Shown here in pieces: positions 10,552 to 54,477 of a DNA stretch of 64,000 bases; within the stretch, counting starts at the first letter, position 1, and the number at the start of each line of letters is the position of its first letter. The DNA comes from Schmidtea nova (lineage: Eukaryota), in assembly GCA_044892505.1 (NCBI GenBank), contig CM097882.1, positions 294,066,001-294,130,000 on the forward strand, in the 5' to 3' direction. The notes below the pieces were generated by a model. That model saw only the letters and a program-made list of their open reading frames with translations, was not told the origin of the DNA and ran no database searches. The translations under genes were made by a program, and so were the position numbers.

Positions 10552-11098
10552 TATATGAATTAAATATTAATTTAATCCATATAAAATTACACATAACATT
10601 CATATTATTTTCCTAAGGATCAAGAAAAAATAAATACATGTATGAAATTTTGAAATAATAATTTATTCAATCAAAACAAATTATTTAATCAATCATATGA
10701 TTTCCATAAAATAACCCCAAGTTGTCTGTATTATTATATTAATAACTTTTTAATCTTTTTTACTGATTTAATTACAAGTAGTAATTCACATAATTTAAAA
10801 TTAAAATATTTTTTCAATTTAACTTTGAATTGAATTATTTTCTTGACTAATAATTTTCATAATTTCAATTTATATCAAATTCAGTAAGCTGGATCCGATT
10901 TTGTAAAGATTTTTTTTCATAAAAACGAAAATACAAAATTATTCCAACTTGTTAGTTGAGCCTGAGCCTCTCACATATAAAAATTTTTCAAAAATTGGAT
11001 TAGAATGCGTCAACCACCGAACTACATTCGACATTTTATAATCAAAATTATAATATTTGTTTGAATTAATATTTACGTAGGTTTAGTAATAATAATAA

Positions 11099-11109
<11 letters not shown>

Positions 11110-11130
<21 letters not shown>

Positions 11131-11320
11131 TCATAATTATCTTTTTTCACCTTTGATCTTTTTTTATTATTATTATCAATAATTCTCATAATGACTATAG
11201 ATCAAAATTTTTTTTTATAAACAATAACACAATATTTCGGCACAGCCTTTATACACACTTGATAAAGGCTGTGCCGAAATATTGTGTTATTGTTTATAAA
11301 AAAAAATTTTGATCTATAGT
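11110..11320. repeat. PLE terminal (pLTR) sequence as a perfect palindrome: 59-bp arms 11194-11252 and 11262-11320, 9-nt loop
   Basis: Same sequence as the 3' end of the PLE at 53086-53230; runs into an N-gap. Confidence 0.85.
11251..11290 (+). ncRNA. Minimal type-I hammerhead ribozyme motif (U3-A8 variant), family A
   Basis: ACAC-TTGATAA-A-GGC(TGT)GCC-GAAA-TAT-T-GTGT. Confidence 0.7.
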
Positions 11321-11899
11321 NNNNNNNNNNNNNNNNNNNNNNNNNNNNNNNNNNNNNNNNNNNNNNNNNNNNNNNNNNNNNNNNNNNNNNNNNNNNNNNN
11401 NNNNNNNNNNNNNNNNNNNNNNNNNNNNNNNNNNNNNNNNNNNNNNNNNNNNNNNNNNNNNNNTTGGAAATTAATTAAATTGGCAATTAATAAATCCATA
11501 AAATTTATTTCAACACAATTATTTAAAAAACTTAACTGGTTTTAATTTGTTCTGATATTCAAACAAATTTACCATCTTCATTTTTTTTATTTTAAATTTT
11601 TAAATTTGAAATATTTTTTAATTTTTACATTTAAATTTAAAATTTTTTCTAAATTTTTAGTTTCACATTTTCAATATTTTGCAACCAATAACTTTAAAAA
11701 TTTTTAGAATCTTCCAGATTCTCTCATATCCCCCTTCTTTAGAATTTTTCTTAAAGTTTTTCCACGTTTCTTTCGATTTTTTACCATTTTTTTTTCTTAA
11801 GATATATCGACTGTCATCCACTTTTTCGATCACTTTGTATGGGCCTCATATCTGTTCTGGTTTTATTTGCGTGTTTATAATTTTAATAACACGTCTTCT

Positions 11900-26862: not shown

Positions 26863-27420
26863 ATGGACAAACTTATGAGTCATGGATGGACGACAGAAAA
26901 ATTAAAAGAACAGCTATTGGTATATTGTTCCGTGGAAAAGAAGCTGATAATGAAATTATGCGCAGATGAAATCGGAGGTACTGAAAAAATAAAAAAGAAG
27001 ATCAATAAATTACACAAAGTTAGACAAATGAGCGAAGAGATTTACACGGAAAAGGAAAGAATACCCGAAGGAGAGATAAATAGAAGCTACAAAGATGTCA
27101 CCATAAAAAATAATAGATATGTCGAACCGGAAAATAGAACCAGAAGATATAGAGAGAACGTAACTCTAGATAATAATATTATAAAATGCTTTTGTTGCGG
27201 ACCAAGGCCATGTAGAAAGGGAATGTCAAAATAAACAATTAATAAGCATCGAGTGTTATGGATGTGGACAACAGGGGCATACCCAGATAGAGTGTCCAAA
27301 TAGGCAGCGAAGAATTATTACATATTATGCATGTAGAAAACAAGGACATATTCAGAGAGATTGCCTGAAAAGACAAAAAAATCGTTACATATTATGCATG
27401 TGGAGTAGAAGGACACGTTA
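26863..27420 (+). pseudogene. Gag-like fragment with about four tandem CCHC knuckles, frameshifted and truncated
   Basis: CFCCG/QGHVEREC, CYGCGQQGHTQIEC, YYACRKQGHIQRDC, YACGVEGH; ends at the pLTR palindrome. Confidence 0.75.
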
Positions 27421-27429
27421 TATATTCCT

Positions 27430-27469
27430 CACAATATATTTCGAGAAATTAATTCTCTTCATCAGGTGC
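27430..27469 (-). ncRNA. Minimal type-I hammerhead ribozyme motif, family B
   Basis: Minus strand GCAC-CTGATGA-A-GAGAA(TTAAT)TTCTC-GAAA-TATAT-T-GTG. Confidence 0.8.
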
Positions 27470-28298
27470 TACCCAATCTTACATTCAACTATAAATCAAA
27501 TAAATCGATTTTTCAAACAAATTAATATTAATTTTTAAAATAAAATACATATTATAAATTCCATATATCAGTCAAAAAATTTAAAACAATTAAAAATTTT
27601 TTAATTTAAATTAATTAATCTTAAAAATATAATATTCTTTTTATTACAAAAAAATATTTTTTTAAGAATATATTATAAATATTTCTATATTTATAAACAA
27701 CAGAATGACTGAAAACAAAATCCACAATCCTCAATTGAAAATGTTCTAATACTCGAGTACAGAAAAGTCGGTCAGTCTTGTCAAAAGTATGTGGCATTTC
27801 GCCCATGACGTTTGAAAAATTAAACGAGTATAGAACACAAATCAAAAGAAGAAAATAAACATCATCAACAATCACATCAGTTAATTTACTTAAATCACAA
27901 AAAATGAGGCAAACAAACGCACCCAAAATTCTTACACTCACATATTCACAAACATCGACATGACTGAAAACAACACTACATCCCATTAATTTTTCAAACG
28001 TCTTTTCTGTACTCGAGTATTAGAACATTTTCAATTGAGGATTGTGGATTTTGTTTTCAGTCATTCTGTTATTTATAAATATGGAAATATTTATGATATA
28101 TTCTTAAAAAATATTTTTTTGTAATAAAAAGAATATTATATTTTTAAGATTAATTTATTTAAATTAAAAAAATTTTAATTGTTTTAAATTTTTTGACTGA
28201 TATATAGAATTAATAATATATATATATTTTTAAAAATTAATATTAATTTGTTTGAAAAATCGATTTATTTGATTTATAGTTGAATGTAAGATTGGGCA

Positions 28299-28339
28299 GC
28301 ACCTGATGAAGAGAATTAAGTTCTCGAAATATATTGTGC
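28299..28339 (+). ncRNA. Minimal type-I hammerhead ribozyme motif, family B
   Basis: GCAC-CTGATGA-A-GAGAA(TTAAG)TTCTC-GAAA-TATAT-T-GTGC; canonical core, 5-bp stem II, 4-bp stem I; predicted cut after 28335. Confidence 0.85.
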
Positions 28340-28379
28340 AAAATATATATTTGGATTGGCGTTTGTTTTTAATTATTTT

Positions 28380-44512: not shown

Positions 44513-44638
44513 TGACTTTAACATTTAAAAAATCATAATAATGCTAAGTTTTGAGTGCAGTATTTTTTCATATTAAAAGTGCTTTTAATATCAATAATTT
44601 CCATAAGACTATATATCAAAAATTTATTTTAAACAAGT

Positions 44639-44673
44639 ACACAATATTTCGGCACAACCCTTTATCGAGTGTG
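44639..44673 (-). ncRNA. Degenerate hammerhead motif, family A, in an isolated pLTR fragment
   Basis: Minus strand CACAC-TCGATAA-AG-GGT(TGT)GCC-GAAA-TAT-T-GTGT; U4C change; flank matches the family-A pLTR. Confidence 0.5.
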
Positions 44674-46015
44674 CTTTTGTTGTTAGCATATGAAATTCTT
44701 ACAACAATTTGATGTCAAGTATAATGCACCTATCCTAACATTGATGTTAAGTGCAAAATCTATTTTTGACTGCAGAATGGTGCTAAAAAATCTAAAAAGT
44801 GCATATCATGTTTACTAGTAGAAATGTTCAGATTTTTGAAGAAACAAAAGTACTTTTCATCATAGTATTGATATTTGATGCAGACAAGTGAAATCAAGTG
44901 CAGAAAAGTGCAAAAATATTTTTTAAATGTAAATATTATCAAATCTTTGTTGTTTCATGTTTAGCACTTGTTTATTGACATTCAATTTTTCCCGATTTAC
45001 AAATGATTTACTTAACAGATTTTAATCATTTATCCATTGTTTGACTCTAAAATATGTGTTGCACAACTTGATGTAAAAGGATTAACAGTAAATATCGAAT
45101 TTCACTAATTTTAATTTTTCAAACAACCAAGGCTATTTTTCAATTTATTTTGTATACCTTAGACCACCATCAAATTATCTACAAGATGACATGTATCTTT
45201 ATTAAAAATAGTATGGATTTTATAATTTTTCACTATATACACATTGAGTTTTTTCCATGTAGATGAAATATTTTTCAACTTATTCAAATATAATTCAAAT
45301 CAGAATCAAATACTCTACAAGGCTACGTGTAAATATTTTTCAAATAATTGATTTTTAAAAATTTCACTTTTGCGTCCAAATAAAAAAAGTTATCAAATTA
45401 TTTTTTAAAATTTTAAAGAAAACAAGAATTAATACATTATTTATTTTTGAAACTTTGTGAAAGTTTTATCAAACTGTGAAACCTATATGAAAATTAAAAG
45501 TTTTACCTTATTTTAGTCAAAATAATCTATGATTTTAGATAAAAATATTTAGTTATTTTAATGAAAGTAATTTTGATGTTTATTTGAAAGTTTTTAGTTA
45601 TTTTATAAAGCTTAGTGAAAGGCAAAGGTTATTCGATGTTAAAGAAATATTTATTTGATAATTAAAAGGTTATTTTAGAAAAATATTAAGTCATTTTATT
45701 AAAGGTTTCTAAAATTATTTGATTATTAAGCAATAATTTTTCAAGTTTTAAGTTATATTATGAAAATTGTGAAGCCTATTTGAAAATTACAACTTTTATT
45801 TTAGACAAATAATTTTGTTTTTAGAATTATATTACGTTATTTAATCAAAGGTTCATATTTTCATTATTATTGTCATTATTATTAAAATACTGTGCATCCA
45901 TTGCTAAAAGACAAAATAGAAAGAACGATAAGATTTATTTAACGCTCAATTATTTATAGCTTAAAGAAGAACTGCAACGAAATATTTAATGAAATATTAC
46001 GTTGCCATTAACCTA

Positions 46016-47311
46016 CGTGGTTGGTTCATTAAGTACCTGCAGTTGGTATCAAAAACAAAAGATATTGACAAAACACATTTATTTTTAGAATTTACTACAT
46101 GTCTAGGCTTATTTTTCAATGTAAGAGCCATTGTTCTCAATACAGTTTTTCCAACAAACAGGAAGTTCTAAAAACCCGTTATTGTAGAACCATTTTGGTT
46201 TTTCGTCGAAGAATTTTGTTACTTCCTCCTTTAGTGAATCACTAGAAACAAAGAATTTACCAGCCAAGTGTTTCTTCAAATGTCTAAATAAATAGAAATC
46301 ACTTGGAGCCAGATCAGGACTATAAGCAGGATGTTCCAATGTTGAAAAGCCACATCGAACAATTTTCTCCGACACAAGTTTTGATGCATGAATTGGAGCA
46401 TTGTCGTGAAGCAGCCACAAATTTGTGTTTTTCTTTTTTCGTCGAAGTTTCCGAGTTTGTTCAATGAGATTAGAATAATAAACACTGTTAATTTTAACTT
46501 GCCTTTCTGCGAAATCAATATTGATTATTCCATCACTATCCCAAAAAATCGAGAGCTTCAAATTTCGACGGTGAATGAATCCAGATTTCAGCTTATTTGT
46601 TGGCTTTTCATCTAGAAACTTCCATTCTGCTGAAGATCTTTTACTTTCTGGAATATAAAGACTTAGTGGTGTCTTGTCTTCCGTTATAATGTTTTTCAAA
46701 AATGACTCACCATGTTCCTCGAACAGTGCAAGATTGTGTTCACAAATAATTAGTCTTTTTTTCACACAATTCAACTCATAAAAATAAGGAACAAATCTGC
46801 TGCACAACTTCCGCACACCCATCTCTTTTATCATTTCATGACACTTACCGACACTGACATTGATCTCCTTCGCCAAATGTTTTACTGTTATCCTTCGTTC
46901 GTCTTTAATTTACGATTCAATCTGATTTTTCTTTTTGCCTTCATCAATTTCAATCGGTCTTCCTTGCTTTGATTCATCAATAACTGACATTTTTCCACTT
47001 TTGAATTCACTAATCCAATAATAAATAGTTCTATCACATGGACAATCTTCTTTATACGTCTCTTGGAGCATTGCTAATATCTCTAATCTTGAAGCCTCGG
47101 GCATTACAAAAAACCTAATCACCGACTGATATTCAATGCTTAAAATTGCCATATTTTGAATGATTAAATATTTGCTCTAAACAAATATTGGTTAAATAAA
47201 ACAAAATGAAGATTTCTAACCTTTTATAAATTCTCTACAACGGAAACATAAAGTTATTATAATATCTCTTATTTTTGATATCGAGTGCAGGTACTTCGTG
47301 AACCAACCACG
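46016..47311 (-). mobile_element. Full-length mariner (DD34D), transposase frameshifted near 46915
   Basis: TIRs CGTGGTTGGTTCA..AAGTACCTGCA with TA at 46014-15 and 47312-13; ORFs 47152-46910 and 46876-46109; ITEDKT, HDNAPIH, YSPDLAPSDF with 34 residues between the last two Asp. Confidence 0.95.
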
Positions 47312-48884
47312 TATAATGTAATAAGTCATGACGCACAAGAATCTGCATCATTACAAAAACAAATAATAAAACTAAGGAAATTAAAAAATTAATACATGCA
47401 ATCATCATTAATAACATCAACAACAATAATATTCATATCAATAATTCATTCTTTTATTCTGCATCATCTTCTTTATGTAAAAATATTATCAAAAATATTA
47501 TCTTTCATTAATTCGTAATAATGCTCATATGACACACTCTTATTCTTACCCAGTCATAAGCTTTTATCATCCTTAATTGTGAGCGCAACTTTCATGTTTT
47601 TAATCCATACAATTGATGATTCTTTGTACTAATACGAAGTTGTAGTACTTATTGTTAGTATCTTCTTTTCCTGAACTTCGGGTATTAATTGCATCAATCA
47701 TTAAATTAATAATTAAATTAACAAAATTTCAAAACTGTATTTTTTACCACAATTATTTAAACAAGGTAAGGAGACTCAAAGAAATATGTAATTTTTCTTG
47801 ACAGAATTTTCATACAAAACATTCATACATATATTCAATATACGATTTTTAATTAATTTCAGCTATATTTTAATAAACCTATATATTTAATAAAAAATTT
47901 AATAAAACTTTATTGTAAATTTTAAATTTGATTTTAAATATTCTAATTATTAAAATCTTTACTGATAATTATTTTTGTTTTAAACGAGATGTTTTCTTTG
48001 CAAAATACTTTTTTTGTATTAAAATAATTTCTAAAAATCTTTAGAGTATTTTTAAACATCTCACACTTATGGCATTTGTTGACCAAAATAACAATTAAGA
48101 TATATTTATGCAAGGCTTCTTTTTTCAATATAGTTTAGTACAATAAGAAAAGAATTTATCAGAATGAATTTAAAGTTCATGTATAAAATAATCTAAAAAT
48201 ATATTCAATCGTGCTCAGTGACTGCTGATATTGGAGAAAAAATTAATTTACATCAATTATCAATGAAAACAAATTTCTTAAATGAACCGGAAATATTTCC
48301 TGGTTTGAGACTCGGAAAATAAACACATTGCGTGTTGATTTATTTGCCAGTGTTAAAATAGTTATACTTGGTTTAAAAATATAAAATTATAATTCGTTCG
48401 TAAATCAAATTATAAGAATTTAATTGGTTCAAGAAAATTATAAATACTTTTAACATTCTCATTCTCTTCATTGAACAATAGGTCGATTTTCGGATAATGT
48501 TAATATTTGATTTTTTATTTATTTTCTTTTTTTTAGAATACAAGATTGAGCTACTTGTTATGAAGATCACGCTAAATTTCCCAGAAATAAAATATTTTGT
48601 TCTTAATTGTGCATCAGAAATTGCTCCTCACGAAATATTTCAAGCTTCTAGAATTAACATTAAAGACTCATATTCCGTCATAAATTTATTCAACATGGAC
48701 TTAAAAAGCAAACCACTACTCAAAACAATTGAGTGCCCATATAAGTGTCCACATTGTAAGGATTACAAAAGAAAGCAGGCAGTAATTATTATTGTCAATG
48801 AACTAAATATTCATCAAAATGACATTTATTACAAATAAATTTGTTAAATGTTTGATAATAAATTTTTATATATATATACTATAT

Positions 48885-49534
48885 CATGGGTATTCAACTA
48901 AATATTATGAAGGACCAAATTTATCTTATAACGGCAATCGAGGGCCGTATCAATTAAAAAGTTGTTAGTTTTGTAGCGGATTACACTTTAACAAAATATA
49001 AACGTGTTTTAGTGATTGTTATTCTATTACCAAGTATTATAATGTTTACCATATATTTTTATATTATTATGTAATTTTCCAGACGCATTTTAAATTAATA
49101 ACTTTATTACCATTATTTCATTTATTTTTTTAAATTTTAACGCATTTTCCAAGGAATTTGAATGATCGCAGCCGCTTATACACATATTTAATTTATTAAA
49201 TATTAAATAAACCCCGTTTCCTATTCAAACTTACAAGAAACCTTTTTCTAATATTTTACTGTTTTTTGCAAGTTTTTTTATTGCAAAATTATCGCAATTT
49301 ACACGAATTCCCAATTTCTTCCTACCGTTAAAGCAATAAAAACACCATTTTGATCGGGTTTGAATCTAAATAGACAGCCTTTTCTATATGTCATACATAA
49401 AATACTTGATCGTTTTTATGCATATATCATCCAAATATTTTTATATATGTGTAATATTCGAAGATATTGAAAGGGCCATTTTCAAATTTCGGCGGGCCGG
49501 ATCTGGCCCGCGGGCCGCCAGTTGAATATCCCTG
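48885..49534. mobile_element. hAT (Charlie-like) MITE
   Basis: Ends CATGGGTATTCAACT and AGTTGAATATCCCTG; perfect 8-bp TSD TACTATAT (48877-84, 49535-42); subterminal GGCCCGCGGGCC. Confidence 0.9.
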
Positions 49535-51049
49535 TACTATATTATAGAATATTGTATGCTAAATCTTGCTACATAAATATATTTTAATAACTATTTTTAT
49601 TTGGACGCAAAAGTTAAATCTTTGAAAATCAATTATTTGAAAAATATTTACACGTAGCCTTGTAGAGTGTTTGATTCTGAGTTGAATCATATTTGATTAA
49701 GTTGAAAAATATTTCATCTACATGGAAAAAACTCAATGTGTACATAGTGAAAAATTATAAAATCCATTATTTTTAATAAAGATAAATGTCATCTTGTAGA
49801 TAATTTGATGGTTGTCTAAGCCTTAGACTCTAAGGTATAAAAAATAAATTGAAAAATAGGCTTGGTTGTTTGAAAAACTAAAACTAGTGAAATTCGATAT
49901 TTCCTGTTAATACTTTTGCATCAAGTTTGCGGCGCAAATATTTTAGAGTCAAGCAATGAATTGATGACTAAAATCTGTTAAGTAAATCATTTTCTTTTAC
50001 ACAACTATTGAAGAGATACAAAAATGTTGTCAGATTAAATATTCATCTTGAAAATCTCTATATATATATTGCACAAACAATTTTTCAAAAATCTCAAACA
50101 CTCGCACTGAAGTGCGATAAAACAAAACACAAAATTGAAAGTTTGGACTCTGCACCCAAAAATAAATATTCAAATTTAAAAAGTTTTCGCGTGAGTTTTT
50201 AAGCGTGCTATATATTATCGCTAGGGACGGGGCAGTTAGGGGGCGATAATTGGCAGTGAGTTAGAAAGCTCACATCTACCTACTGATGTTGAATAATCGA
50301 GTGTTTCATAATCAAAGTTTTACCGTGTATATTTTTTACTATTGATCTATTTTCATTTTCTTTATCTTCATTTTTTTCAGATTTTAGGTCGATATATTTT
50401 GTTTTATATTAAACCCAAATATAAAGGAAAATGTTGATTTATAATACGAAAAGATATGAAAAAAGTAATAATCAGAAAAAAATAATTAAATTGATCCCAG
50501 ATATTTAAAATAAATTTATTTTCTCTTAAATTTTAATGAACCTTTTTTTAAAAATTATAGAGATTATTATTACTAGTCAAAAATGACATAAGTTTTTTAA
50601 ATATCAATTAAAAACAATTTTTCTTCTTTTAATGTTTTAATTCATATTCAACAACTCCTAATGACAATAATAATATCGGATTCAGAGTCCAAACGATAAA
50701 TCTTTTATAATTCGTGTACCATCTTTCAGCGTTACTGACAGTTTGGATTTTTTAATTCAATATTATTTACTAAATTAATAAATAATTTAAAAAAAATTTA
50801 GATATTACTTATAATAATCAATAGAAAATCATTCAGCGTTACAGCGTCATTAATATANNNNNNNNNNNNNNNNNNNNNNNNNNNNNNNNNNNNNNNNNNN
50901 NNNNNNNNNNNNNNNNNNNNNNNNNNNNNNNNNNNNNNNNNNNNNNNNNNNNNNNNNNNNNNNNNNNNNNNNNNNNNNNNNNNNNNNNNNNNNNNNNNNN
51001 NNNNNNNNNNNNNNNNNNNNNNNNNNNNNNNNNNNNNNNNNNNNNNNNA

Positions 51050-53219
51050 TCCACCAAATCTTCAAGTTTAGCTGAAAAGCACAATCATCTTCAGGATCCA
51101 AATCGTAGAACATATCCAAATATGCCTGTCTTTTCGACTGAACTTGAAGACAAAATCAGATTTTTAGAAATTAAAGTCAAAACTTTAGTCAAAGAACAAA
51201 TTATCTTTCTTGAAAAACATTGCTCAACACAAAATTCTTTCACTTCAAACATAAATAAAATTAAGAATTCGAAAAGACTTCACAATTCTTCCATCAGATA
51301 AAACCAATCGACTAATTGCCCTTGACACAGAACAATACAATACTCTATTTGAAGAACATCTCTCGAACTATGAACGATAAACAAAATAATCTTACCTGCA
51401 TCGACTCAGATTTTATACAATAAGAAACTGTCAACACTTGAAAATAAACAAAGCAACCTTCAAATCAAAGATTTACTTTTAAAATGCAACTGAAATGAGC
51501 CCTTACCTAGTAATATGACTATGTTACCTAAAGACCACAAAAGTCCTTTAAAAGGCAGATCTCTTGTCCGCTGTTGACACTCCTTCCACAAAACATTCTA
51601 AAGTTCTTTCAGAAGTCCTAAAAACACTTTTGCCTTTGGTTCCTTGTCATTTTAAAAACACAACTGAATTCGTCTCCGAAATTACAAATACGACTATTCC
51701 GTTAAACGCAGAACAACAGTACTTCTGGGGATCTCTTGATGTTTCCAATCTTTACGGATCTATTTCTCTTCACGGAGACAATAATATTTTTGATATCGCA
51801 GCTTCTTTCTTTGAAACTCATAAAGCCAATACTGACCTCGCAGACTTAACTAAACAAGACTTTTTAGAACTTCTAAAATTAGCAATAAATTCAGGTACTG
51901 TCATAATTAAAGAAAAACCATTCAAACAAATTCATGGATTAGCCATGGGTAACAACCTTTCTCCCATCTTAGCCATCTTCTACATGAACTTTATAGAATC
52001 TAAGATCATATCTTTTTTGGGGACAAAATACTTTTCTGGAAACGATACATCGATGACATCTTCATAGTCTCCACAATCCCTCTCAATCAAATCCTATCAC
52101 ACACAAATTCTACTAACACCAACATACAATTCACTTTTGAAACACCGAACACAGAAGGTAAAATACCGTTTTTAGATACCATGGTAAGTTTCATAAAAGG
52201 CCAAGATACACTAAATGCAAACACCGAGCTATATTCTAAAAGTTTACATAGTGGTCATATCCTCCCATGGAAAAGCCACGTTCCACTTCAACGCAAAATC
52301 GCATTACTAATTGGAGAAAGAAAAAGAGCCATAAGAAACTGTTCAGGCGCAAACAAAATACAAGAAACATTAGAAAACTTCAAAATACGATTCCTCCAAA
52401 ATGGATACCCTGAAGAATTTGTAAAGAAATACTTCATTAACGAACCATACCACAATAAACGCAACAATAGGAAACGCCAGAAACACAATAACAATAACAA
52501 ACACACAACATATCTAAGATTACCTTTCCTAAATGACACTACAGCCAACAAAATGACCAACATTTTTAATCAAACAGATTTGCCTATCCACATCCGTCCA
52601 ACGTTCATAACTTCCGCACCGTTAAAATTACAACTCCGAAAGCCACCAATTTCCAACATCTCCAAACATAAATGTCTTTGCCGTTCCACAACCCGATGCT
52701 TTTGCTTTTCCAAAAATATAGTATATAAACTTTATTGTCAAAAAAGTGACGCTACTTACATAAGAGAAACACATAGAACTTTTCGCACCCAACTTAATGA
52801 ACACACTAAAAACAAAACCAGTAATTATTATGAACACTGGGAGAAAGTACATAAAACAACTCCATCTATAGAAGAAACAAAATGCCAGATTCTACAAGAG
52901 GGATTCAAAAATTCATTACAAAGATTAGCTTCCGAAACTTTTTACATAAAAAAATACAAACCGTCCATCAACATTCAATTCGCACAAAAAAATTAAAATA
53001 AATTTTAATCATCCAATAAAATCATTATAAAATATTAAAAAATAATTAAGGTTACTATTTAGGATTAAGTTAATATAACGATTGAAATACACACTTGATA
53101 AAGGCTGTGCCGAAATATTGTGTTATTGTTTATAAAAAATTTTGATCTATAGTCATCATTATGAGAATTATTGATAATTATAATAAAAAAAGATCAAAGG
53201 TGAAAAAAGATAATTATGA

Positions 53220-53230
<11 letters not shown>
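51050..53230 (+). mobile_element. Penelope-like retroelement: RT plus GIY-YIG endonuclease (frameshifted), 3' pLTR and (ATT)n tail; 5' end in a gap
   Basis: DKTNRLIALD; LPKDHK; SLDVSNLY; GLAMGNNLSP; RYIDDIF (shifted frame at ~52030); PFLD; NIVYKLYC...YIRET.RTF...EH. Confidence 0.93.
53086..53127 (+). ncRNA. Minimal type-I hammerhead ribozyme motif (U3-A8 variant), family A, in the PLE 3' pLTR
   Basis: AATA(C)ACAC-TTGATAA-A-GGC(TGT)GCC-GAAA-TAT-T-GTGTTATT; 8-bp stem I with one bulge; predicted cut after 53119. Confidence 0.8.
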
Positions 53231-53284
<54 letters not shown>

Positions 53285-54477
53285 TTATTTTATTATTATC
53301 ATTATTATTAGTGTTGTGCTGGTAGAATTGAGGTTCAATTTTTGTTTTAAAACGCAAAAATAAAATTAAAAGCACACGATAAAACATAAGAAAATTAAAC
53401 AGGAAAATAGCATGAAAAAATATAGGATATTAAAGCATAAATAATAGTCATACGAACCGCTCTTCATAAGTCGGTTGAATTAGGGCGAAAACAATATAAA
53501 AAGATGTATCTTAAAAGAGAGCACAAAATTTCAGTGACTACTCAAGAATTGAATGGGGAAGGTCATTGCTAGTAAAAAGCATGATCGAAAAATAAAATTA
53601 GTTACAAAATAAAGAGAATAATTTATTAAAAAATATAGAAAAATCCCCATTAAAATATCGTAAAAATACCATGTTATAAAAGTAGAATTGAAATAAAATT
53701 TGATTGCTTTAATCAATCAATTAACGCGCCTAAAATATGGATACACACATTATTTAATAGAAATAAAAATAAATATTTAGGAATAAATAAAATAAATTAT
53801 AAAATAAAATTTAAAGAAAATAAATAAATAATTATTTGGTAAAATAAATAAGTTGAATATTAAAATAAATAGATGAATTGAATTTTAAATGTTCTTGTTT
53901 TATTAAACAGAATGGGTAGGTGCCAAGCATAAATAATATAAATAGACACTAAAATTCATAATTTTAACACGCTTGAATATTTTTGAACACTGTAACACGT
54001 TAATTCACGATTTTCAATTCTGCCTGCCAGCATTGGTCAGTAATTTTTCTATTCAATTGTGTGGTACATCAATAACAAGTATGTTCTTATTTTATGCATT
54101 CTTTTAAAACTTTTCGTAACTATTATGCTTTATTTTGTAACTGTATGTTATATAATTTGTAATGTTATATAAATTTGTTTAGTTTTGTCTTGTTCAATTG
54201 ATGTGTCCCGATTAAACTGATTTTAATAGAGGCTTTGTTGGCTCACCAGTCTCGAGTCTCCGATGGTTAAAAACTGTTTAAAAAGAATAATTGGTTCCTC
54301 CGGACAATAGTCTCATTAAACTATATAGGATAGCCAGGGAAAAGTAAAATTTAAGAGTGTTGTAAAAAATCTTTGAGAAAAATAAGTGTAGAGGTTTAGA
54401 TAAGATAGCGAAAGGATATAGGAAGTTAAGAATTTTTAAATTTTAAAGACCTTTGAAAATAGATAGTAGTTAGATCA

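What the first reader, a model, noticed from the sequence alone, without database searches (positions are those of the whole stretch)
53086..53127. Hammerhead ribozyme with a compensatory U3-A8 core in a PLE pLTR (three copies in the window)
Seen: ACAC-UUGAUAA-A-GGC/UGU/GCC-GAAA-UAU-U-GUGU lies ~90 nt after the GIY-YIG stop, recurs with an identical core at 11251-11290 and is degenerate at 44639-44673. Established: PLE pLTRs carry minimal hammerheads, C3 pairs with G8 in the active fold, and a loopless palindromic stem III favours cleavage as a dimer. Inference: CUGAUGA to UUGAUAA keeps the 3-8 pair, so this may be an active variant that CUGANGA searches miss, cutting after AUU (53119).
Basis: partly seen in the sequence, partly recalled or inferred. 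Interest (0 to 1): 0.8.

Follow-up and report, generated by a model that had tools for sequence, protein, structure and literature searches.

The report
Penelope-element mini-hammerhead, U3-A8 core variant
The motif is a genuine, evolutionarily conserved copy of the stripped-down hammerhead ribozyme that Penelope-like retrotransposons carry in their terminal repeats, but this U3-A8 core variant was published in 2011 and 2014, and its cutting activity could not be tested here.

Summary
Observation confirmed. A 33-nt motif sits at 53091-53123 (+), 94 nt after the stop of a decayed Penelope-like element (PLE) ORF. An identical copy lies at 11255-11287 (+). There is also a 5'-truncated inverted copy (11231-11252, -) and a degenerate copy (44639-44672, -).

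Chance is excluded. A minimal-hammerhead descriptor expects 0.005 hits per window.

- Eight of ten motif-bearing members of the window's own PLE clade, the window among them, carry U3-A8. One carries U3.G8 and one C3-G8.
- Distant PLEs mostly carry C3-G8, and no C3/A8 mismatch occurs.
- Helices I and II and the palindromic helix III covary.
- N7 varies freely, H17 is never G, and the remaining core bases are conserved, invariant in all but a few decayed copies.

The motif opens a ~130-nt pseudo-LTR that also holds a hairpin and the ORF start codon.

It is not new. Natural U3-A8 covariation was reported in 2011, and in flatworm PLE hammerheads in 2014. This scan had also reached the same verdict elsewhere in this genome.

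I class it as a new member of a known kind, of low-to-moderate interest.

The parts
53091..53123 (+). Minimal type-I hammerhead motif with a U3-A8 core. Helix I is 53091-53094 / 53120-53123. Core positions 3-9 are 53095-53101, followed by an extra A at 53102. Helix II is 53103-53105 / 53109-53111 with loop 53106-53108. G12-A14 are 53112-53114. The palindromic helix III AUAU is 53115-53118 and U17 is 53119. The predicted scissile bond is 53119/53120.
   Evidence: the minimum-energy fold of the 42-mer gives helices I and II; 38.8 bits.
53124..53220 (+). Rest of the ~130-nt pseudo-LTR. It holds a hairpin with arms 53142-53148 / 53191-53197, then AGGUGA (53198-53203), which corresponds to the ORF start AUGGUGA of relatives, then about 17 nt of tail.
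   Evidence: In L003 the homologous ATG is the start codon of an 877-aa PLE ORF.
53221..53310 (.). (ATT)n microsatellite that abuts the 3' end of the element and is the likely insertion target.
   Evidence: inverted pair I4 and the repeat pairs against 28.4 kb.
52181..52996 (+). C-terminal part of the PLE ORF (HTH_animal plus GIY-YIG endonuclease), 271 aa, with its stop at 52996.
   Evidence: 45% identity to P0001, which carries PF01541 and PF26215; 914 relatives.
51122..52067 (+). N-terminal and reverse-transcriptase pieces of the same PLE ORF, broken by frameshifts and stops (pieces 51122-51301 and 51564-52067). A run of N at 50858-51048 lies just upstream and was left untouched.
   Evidence: (RVT_1, E 0.03).
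11255..11320 (+). Second copy: an identical hammerhead motif at 11255-11287 plus the start of the pseudo-LTR, running into a run of N (11321-11463, left untouched).
11084..11252 (-). Inverted pseudo-LTR copy that lies head to head with the copy above. It is truncated inside the hammerhead core, starting at A6, so helix I 5' strand and U3-G5 are absent. It ends in (ATT)n.
   Evidence: I4, 96% complementary to 53156-53266; 17 bits, model positions 8-32.
44560..44672 (-). Diverged solo pseudo-LTR copy. Its hammerhead motif at 44639-44672 has U4 changed to C and an extra base in helix II. Similarity to the 53-kb copy begins at the 5' edge of the motif, and the copy ends next to a (TA)n run.
   Evidence: 24.8 bits.

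Best explanation
This is a minimal type-I hammerhead motif of the kind found in the pseudo-LTRs of Penelope-like retrotransposons. The tertiary base pair of the catalytic core is U3-A8 instead of C3-G8. It opens a ~130-nt pseudo-LTR that consists of the hammerhead, a hairpin, the ORF start codon and a short tail.

Shown here: the motif is under purifying selection as an RNA structure across a deep PLE clade. The core bases a hammerhead needs are kept, N7 is free, and helices I, II and III covary.

Inferred: the RNA self-cleaves between U17 (53119) and G1.1 (53120). With a 3-bp helix II, a 4-bp helix I and no closed helix III, it would do so only weakly on its own. It probably needs either a second copy that pairs through the AUAU palindrome or the element's own protein.

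This particular copy belongs to a dead element. Its ORF is broken and its tail start codon is mutated.
For: Specificity:
- Descriptor hits are 3 against 0.005 expected.
- The motif lies on the ORF strand in 16 of 17 descriptor hits in the related loci.

Clade conservation:
- U3-A8 motifs lie 87-180 nt after the stop in L002 and L005-L009, and 5' of the ORF in L003, although the proteins are only 36-46% identical.
- The clade has 100/99 support.

Covariation:
- 92% of cells are paired, against 61% in shuffles and 26-43% when the partners are slid.
- The covariation score is 0.767 against 0.208.
- The 3-8 pair is CG 22, UA 9, UG 1.
- The inner helix III pair is CG 18, UA 8, AU 4, GC 2.
- The 3-8 and helix III pairs were not part of the model that made the alignment.

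Other support:
- RNAalifold on a MAFFT alignment of seven pseudo-LTRs recovers helices I and II on its own.
- Core columns are 84-93% identical, against 63% for the spacer.
- The motif shows all four hallmarks listed for metazoan PLE hammerheads in PMC4209133: covarying families, an extra base between positions 9 and 10.1, G10.1-C11.1, and palindromic 15.2-16.2.
- Perreault et al. 2011 (PMC3088659) state that cores with covaried 3-8 bases are active in vitro.
Against: The fold is weak. It scores -6.5 kcal/mol with z -1.0 for the 42-mer, and it is lost in the 101-nt context. The intermolecular AUAU helix is worth about -2.4 kcal/mol.

No Rfam hammerhead model matches, even at E up to 10.

None of the four copies in the window starts at the predicted cleavage site. 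No same-strand partner copy is visible for the 53-kb element.

Published PLE hammerheads cleave poorly in vitro (PMC4209133). In the one reconstituted PLE, the hammerhead needed the protein and was dispensable for insertion, and no RNA ends at the cut site were found (PMC11167929).

Some clade members have a damaged motif: L002 has an extra A in the core, and L005 and L009 have weakened helix II.
Confidence: 0.68

Rival explanations
1. The motif descends from a hammerhead and is conserved as a structured RNA, but it no longer cuts. On this view it serves another role in the pseudo-LTR, such as a binding site for the element's RT/EN protein, a marker of the transcript 5' end, or part of the internal promoter region.
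For: The helices are very small and the predicted stability is weak. Pseudo-LTR copies in the window start at the 5' edge of the motif or inside the core, never at the cut site. One clade member has almost no helix II (L051). PMC11167929 found cleavage dispensable for insertion in vitro. PMC8557442 notes that PLE clades without hammerheads proliferate well.
Against: The pattern of conservation is exactly what catalysis requires. G5, A6, A9, G12-A14, A15.1-U16.1 and a non-G at position 17 are kept, in all but a few decayed copies. N7 and the loops drift. The 3-8 pair changes only in ways that keep pairing. A protein-binding site alone would not be expected to reproduce this pattern.
Confidence: 0.22
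2. The motif is a decayed relic or a chance look-alike. On this view, C3 to U and G8 to A are just two deamination-type transitions in a 70% A+T genome, with no selection for pairing.
For: Both changes are transitions towards A/T, and the genome is 29.8% G+C. The host element is dead. The copy at 44.6 kb is visibly decaying.
Against: The same U3-A8 state recurs in seven further loci from other samples, including G+C-richer ones (L006, L007), with the other core bases kept in most of them. No C3/A8 half-step is seen in 35 distinct motifs. The chance expectation is 0.005 per window.
Confidence: 0.04

Closest known systems
U3-A8 minimal hammerheads of Cercyon PLEs in Schistosoma mansoni (Cervera and de la Pena 2014, PMC4209133)
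   Same: It is a flatworm PLE pseudo-LTR motif with U3-A8 in place of C3-G8. It has an unpaired base between 9 and 10.1, a short helix I and no closed helix III. Most copies are single and dispersed.
   Different: The published S. mansoni families are described with a long helix II (7-8 bp). Here helix II is 3 bp with a 3-nt loop. Whether the window's clade is Cercyon itself could not be tested, because no organism names or published sequences were available.
Canonical C3-G8 minimal hammerheads of metazoan PLEs, including the second family in this window (28299-28339 + and 27431-27469 -)
   Same: The architecture is the same: a 4-7 bp helix I, an extra A, G10.1-C11.1, a palindromic helix III, H17, and a location in the pseudo-LTR.
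   Different: The core pair is C3-G8, helix II is usually 4-7 bp, and helix III is mostly ACGU rather than AUAU or AAUU.
Natural U3-A8 hammerheads reported by Perreault et al. 2011 (PMC3088659)
   Same: The covariation at core positions 3 and 8 is the same, and that paper states such covaried cores are active in vitro.
   Different: That paper says only that several examples exist. I did not compare their helix architecture or genomic context with this motif.
PAc (Poseidon of Anolis carolinensis) hammerhead (PMC11167929)
   Same: It is a PLE pseudo-LTR hammerhead placed close to the ORF start. The C3G/G8C double mutant partly restores cleavage, which shows that pairing rather than base identity matters at positions 3 and 8.
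   Different: The PAc motif overlaps the start codon, whereas here the start codon lies about 75 nt downstream of the cut site. PAc has C3-G8, and its cleavage needed the PLE protein.

Membership tests
Hammerhead ribozyme (core definition) | 5' core box N3-U4-G5-A6-N7-N8-A9, with positions 3 and 8 able to pair | tested here: met
   UUGAUAA at 53095-53101. The 3-8 pair covaries as CG 22, UA 9, UG 1 among 35 distinct motifs.
Hammerhead ribozyme (core definition) | 3' core box G12-A13-A14, the A15.1-U16.1 pair, and H17 (not G) before the scissile bond | tested here: met
   GAA at 53112-53114, A53115/U53118 and U53119. A15.1-U16.1 is invariant in 35 of 35 motifs, and no aligned motif has G at position 17.
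Hammerhead ribozyme (core definition) | Helices I and II flank the core and are supported by compensatory changes | tested here: met
   All four helix I pairs and two of three helix II pairs show changes on both sides. RNAalifold recovers both helices independently.
Hammerhead ribozyme (core definition) | Site-specific self-cleavage that yields 2',3'-cyclic phosphate and 5'-OH ends | not testable with these tools
No wet assay was possible.
Metazoan PLE minimal hammerhead (Cervera and de la Pena 2014) | An unpaired base between positions 9 and 10.1 | tested here: met
   A53102. It is present in every U3-A8 clade motif and in 16 of 17 descriptor hits.
Metazoan PLE minimal hammerhead (Cervera and de la Pena 2014) | A conserved G10.1-C11.1 pair | tested here: met
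   G53103-C53111. The pair is GC in 32 of 35 distinct motifs.
Metazoan PLE minimal hammerhead (Cervera and de la Pena 2014) | No closed helix III, with positions 15.1-16.1 palindromic so that two copies can pair | tested here: met
   AUAU at 53115-53118. The inner pair changes among UA, AU, GC and CG while remaining self-complementary.
Metazoan PLE minimal hammerhead (Cervera and de la Pena 2014) | Location in the pseudo-LTR of an element that encodes a telomerase-like RT and a GIY-YIG endonuclease | tested here: met
   RT and EN ORF pieces lie at 51564-52996. The same motif block is found 5' of the ORF (L003, L051) and 3' of it (the window and seven loci).
Metazoan PLE minimal hammerhead (Cervera and de la Pena 2014) | A second same-strand copy nearby (tandem pseudo-LTRs) that allows a dimer on one transcript | tested here: inconclusive
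   No same-strand partner is found upstream of the 53-kb element. A run of N at 50858-51048 lies where the 5' pseudo-LTR might be, and it was not filled. The pair at 11.2 kb is inverted.

The most novel reading that the evidence does not exclude
The U3-A8 core combined with a 3-bp helix II could define a distinct, protein-dependent hammerhead subclass that has been fixed for a long time in one deep PLE clade. The U.G-bearing elements would be surviving intermediates of the C-G to U-A switch.

In this reading the motif marks the 5' end of the element's transcript. The very abundant ~130-nt solo pseudo-LTR copies would then arise because the reverse transcriptase also starts at the 5' copy of the hairpin-plus-start-codon module and runs off at the transcript start, not from ribozyme-cut RNA.
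Probability: 0.15. Interest if true: 0.5.

Novelty: new member of a known kind. Interest (0 to 1): 0.3.

Why it matters
The finding adds little that is new in kind. PLE hammerheads, their dimer-type architecture and the U3-A8 covariation have been in the literature since 2011-2014.

The U3-A8 state is a long-lived character of a whole PLE clade and not a local decay product. C-G, U.G and U-A states all occur while the mismatch C/A never does, and a helix II of only 3 bp is maintained.

That makes the clade a convenient natural series for testing two questions: how far a hammerhead can be reduced, and whether PLE hammerheads depend on the element's protein. It also reminds annotators that Rfam models and CUGANGA descriptors miss these motifs.

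Tried and rejected
- Rfam: the scan of the whole window at gathering scores and of 52950-53250 at E up to 10 found no hammerhead family. The only matches were chance snoRNA-like ones.
I therefore obtained no reads, no RNA ends and no genome-wide copy census, and read laying was not used.
- Viral contigs: the pattern scan found nothing.
- Dimer cofolding: ViennaRNA returned only domain-swapped versions of the monomer fold and was uninformative about the helix III dimer.
- MAFFT realignment of 14 motifs shifted the U3 group by one column. I replaced it with a covariance-model alignment.
- Hairpin in the alignment fold: RNAalifold did not recover the pseudo-LTR hairpin because its 5' arm was misaligned. 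Single-sequence folds show its closing stem in 5 of 7 sequences, with unimpressive z-scores.
- Organism names for the related contigs could not be obtained, so the taxonomic spread of the clade is unknown.
- Papers not held: Przybilski and Hammann 2007 and Lunse et al. 2016. Their content is cited only through papers that quote them.
- L047 has 456 nt after the stop but no motif at E up to 1.
- The two runs of N next to the copies were left as they are.

Full report
**What is there**

At 53091-53123 (+) the window reads as follows:
- helix I: ACAC
- core: UUGAUAA
- an extra A
- helix II: GGC, loop UGU, GCC
- GAA
- AUAU
- U
- helix I: GUGU

The 25-nt heart of the motif occurs three times in the window with at most 3 mismatches, against 0.00 expected. 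The copies are:
- an identical copy at 11255-11287 (+);
- an inverted copy that abuts it head to head, which starts only at A6 of the core (11231-11252, -);
- a diverged copy at 44639-44672 (-), with U4 changed to C and an extra base in helix II.

So the window holds two intact copies, one truncated copy and one decaying copy.

**Is it more than chance?**

I wrote a minimal-hammerhead descriptor with these requirements:
- any bases at positions 3 and 8;
- an optional extra base after A9;
- a helix II of at least 3 bp closed by G10.1-C11.1;
- GAA;
- a palindromic A...U helix III;
- H17;
- a helix I of at least 4 bp.

It finds only three sites in both strands of the window. Two are the intact copies. 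The third is a canonical CUGAUGA motif at 28299-28339.

Two hundred dinucleotide-preserving shuffles gave a mean of 0.005 hits. I set the stem-length limits after seeing the motif, so this number is somewhat generous. The comparative evidence below does not depend on it.

**Context**

Upstream lies a decayed Penelope-like element (PLE):
- an N-terminal piece at 51122-51301;
- a reverse-transcriptase piece at 51564-52067 (RVT_1, E 0.03);
- a 271-aa C-terminal piece at 52181-52996 with a visible GIY-YIG signature.

The C-terminal piece is 45% identical to P0001, which carries the Pfam HTH_animal and GIY-YIG domains. It has 914 relatives at E up to 0.001 in the representative library. The ORF is broken by frameshifts and stops, so this copy is dead.

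A run of N at 50858-51048 lies where the 5' end of the element might be, and another at 11321-11463 follows the 11.2-kb copy. I left both untouched.

**Related loci**

I fetched contigs encoding the closest endonuclease relatives. I also fetched 40 metagenome loci found with an alignment of the endonuclease part.

A relaxed descriptor found 17 motifs in 106.5 kb, 16 of them on the ORF strand. A covariance model built from 16 motifs, with helices I and II only, found 44 matches in the window plus 46 loci and two more in five further loci. With filters off it found no further credible copy in the window.

**The core pair tracks the phylogeny**

The loci fall into two groups by endonuclease similarity.

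Loci 33-46% identical to the window's endonuclease over about 250 residues form a clade with 100/99 support. Its assessable members carry:
- U3-A8 in the window, L002, L003, L005, L006, L007, L008 and L009;
- U3.G8 in L051;
- C3-G8 in L049.

The distant PLEs (20-27% identity) carry C3-G8.

Resolution inside the clade is poor. At least one C-G to U-A switch is required, and more cannot be counted.

On the model alignment the 3-8 pair is CG 22, UA 9, UG 1 and other 2 among 35 distinct motifs. A C3/A8 mismatch never occurs. This pair was not part of the model's structure, so the alignment was not fitted to it.

**The rest of the structure covaries**

Over ten pairs, 92.2% of cells form standard pairs, against 61.4% in shuffles and 26-43% when partners are slid by 1-3 columns. 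The covariation score is 0.767 against 0.208.
- All four helix I pairs and two of three helix II pairs show double changes.
- G10.1-C11.1 is GC in 32 of 35 motifs.
- A15.1-U16.1 is invariant.
- The inner helix III pair switches among CG, UA, AU and GC, so the palindrome is kept.

Within the U3-A8 group, N7 is U, A, G or C. Position 17 is U, A or C and never G. U4 (apart from an extra A before it in L002), G5, A6, A8, A9, the extra A, G12-A14, A15.1 and U16.1 do not change. This is the constraint pattern of a working hammerhead.

RNAalifold on an independent MAFFT alignment of seven pseudo-LTRs predicts helices I and II as the only consensus structure. Core columns are 84-93% identical, against 63% for the spacer.

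**Anatomy of the pseudo-LTR**

Downstream of the motif, every clade member has a hairpin whose closing stem covaries. The hairpin is followed directly by AUGGUGA or a close variant.

In L003, where the block lies 5' of the ORF, that AUG is the start codon of the 877-aa ORF. L051 carries the block at both ends of its contig.

The pseudo-LTR of this clade is therefore the hammerhead, the hairpin, the start codon and a short tail. In the window:
- it runs from 53091 to about 53220;
- the hairpin arms are 53142-53148 / 53191-53197;
- the start codon is mutated to AGG at 53198-53200;
- an (ATT)n run follows.

The copy at 44.6 kb ends next to a (TA)n run.

The head-to-head inverted pair at 11.2 kb matches the published description that an inverted 5'-truncated copy often adjoins PLE insertions. 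The microsatellite ends match the published insertion bias (PMC8557442).

**How it most likely works**

By homology the scissile bond is between U17 (53119) and G1.1 (53120).

The fold is marginal. The 42-mer gives helices I and II as its minimum-energy structure at -6.5 kcal/mol (z -1.0), but the fold is lost in a 101-nt context. Helix III exists only if two copies pair through AUAU, which is worth about -2.4 kcal/mol.

The literature shows the following:
- Metazoan PLE hammerheads cleave poorly in vitro and only as dimers or with an engineered helix III (PMC4209133).
- The one reconstituted PLE has a protein-assisted hammerhead that is dispensable for insertion in vitro and leaves no detectable RNA ends at the cut site (PMC11167929).
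- The C3G/G8C double mutant partly restores activity (PMC11167929).
- Covaried 3-8 cores are active in vitro (PMC3088659, citing Przybilski and Hammann 2007, which I could not read).

I therefore take the motif as a selected hammerhead whose cleavage is weak and probably assisted.

The main rival is a hammerhead-derived structural element that no longer cuts. It is favoured by one observation: none of the four copies in the window begins at the predicted cut site.

**Novelty**

Natural U3-A8 covariation was reported in 2011 (PMC3088659). In 2014 Cervera and de la Pena found the U3-A8 variant in Cercyon PLEs of the flatworm Schistosoma mansoni and retrieved about 1,300 hits with a dedicated descriptor (PMC4209133).

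Earlier notes of this scan on other DNA of the same genome reached the same verdict (s1-408923, s1-408921). They describe the genome as a flatworm's, which I did not test.

- clade-level conservation of the U3-A8 state;
- the C-G / U.G / U-A series without mismatches;
- the very short helix II;
- the hairpin-plus-start-codon module.

I file the finding as a new member of a known kind.

**Limits**

The organisms behind the related contigs are unknown. Several related contigs may come from the same samples (L006, L049 and L050 share one), so the loci are not all independent.

Noticed in passing
window 53142-53203; L003:340-387; L009, L008, L007, L006, L002, L049 downstream of their hammerhead motifs: A second conserved pseudo-LTR module. 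It is a hairpin whose closing stem covaries between relatives, followed directly by the PLE start codon in the context AUGGUGA. In the window copies the AUG is AGG. It may be the recognition or initiation site for the reverse transcriptase, or a translation element.
   Followed up: partly
window 27431-27469 (-) and 28299-28339 (+): A second hammerhead family with a canonical CUGAUGA core, a 5-6 bp helix II and an AUAUAU palindrome. It sits at the outer ends of a ~350-bp inverted repeat pair (27419-27770 / 27999-28349). Both copies are recovered by the covariance model at 31 bits.
   Followed up: partly
L051:19-49 and L046:539-579: Two PLE hammerhead motifs with a U3.G8 wobble core (UUGAAGA, UUGAGGA). 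L051 has almost no helix II, only a G and a C around 5 nt. They are possible intermediates between the C-G and U-A states.
   Followed up: partly
L049:1449-1484: A C3-G8 motif inside the otherwise U3-A8 PLE clade. Its hairpin-plus-start-codon module closely resembles that of the U3-A8 locus L007. The tree cannot say whether this is the ancestral state or a reversal.
   Followed up: partly
L002:971-1002; L005:1326-1358; L033:2199-2238: Irregular motifs. L002 has an extra A between U3 and U4. L005 has lost G10.1 and helix II pairing. L033 has C3 opposite U8 and a U as the extra base.
   Followed up: no
window 53009-53022: A 14-nt stretch of the 3' UTR that contains AATAAA (53015-53020) is identical in the closest relative, L001 (near L001:1126-1139). 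It lies about 70 nt upstream of the hammerhead and may be a polyadenylation signal.
   Followed up: no
window 45065-49927: A mariner-like DDE transposase ORF (46109-46876, -; Transposase_1 E 2e-11, DDE_3) lies between long inverted repeats (45065-45405 and 49575-49927, 93% complementary).
   Followed up: no
L047:2705-3160: A clade member with 456 nt after its stop codon but no hammerhead motif at E up to 1. Its flank is extremely A+T-rich, and the motif may be lost or lie further away.
   Followed up: no
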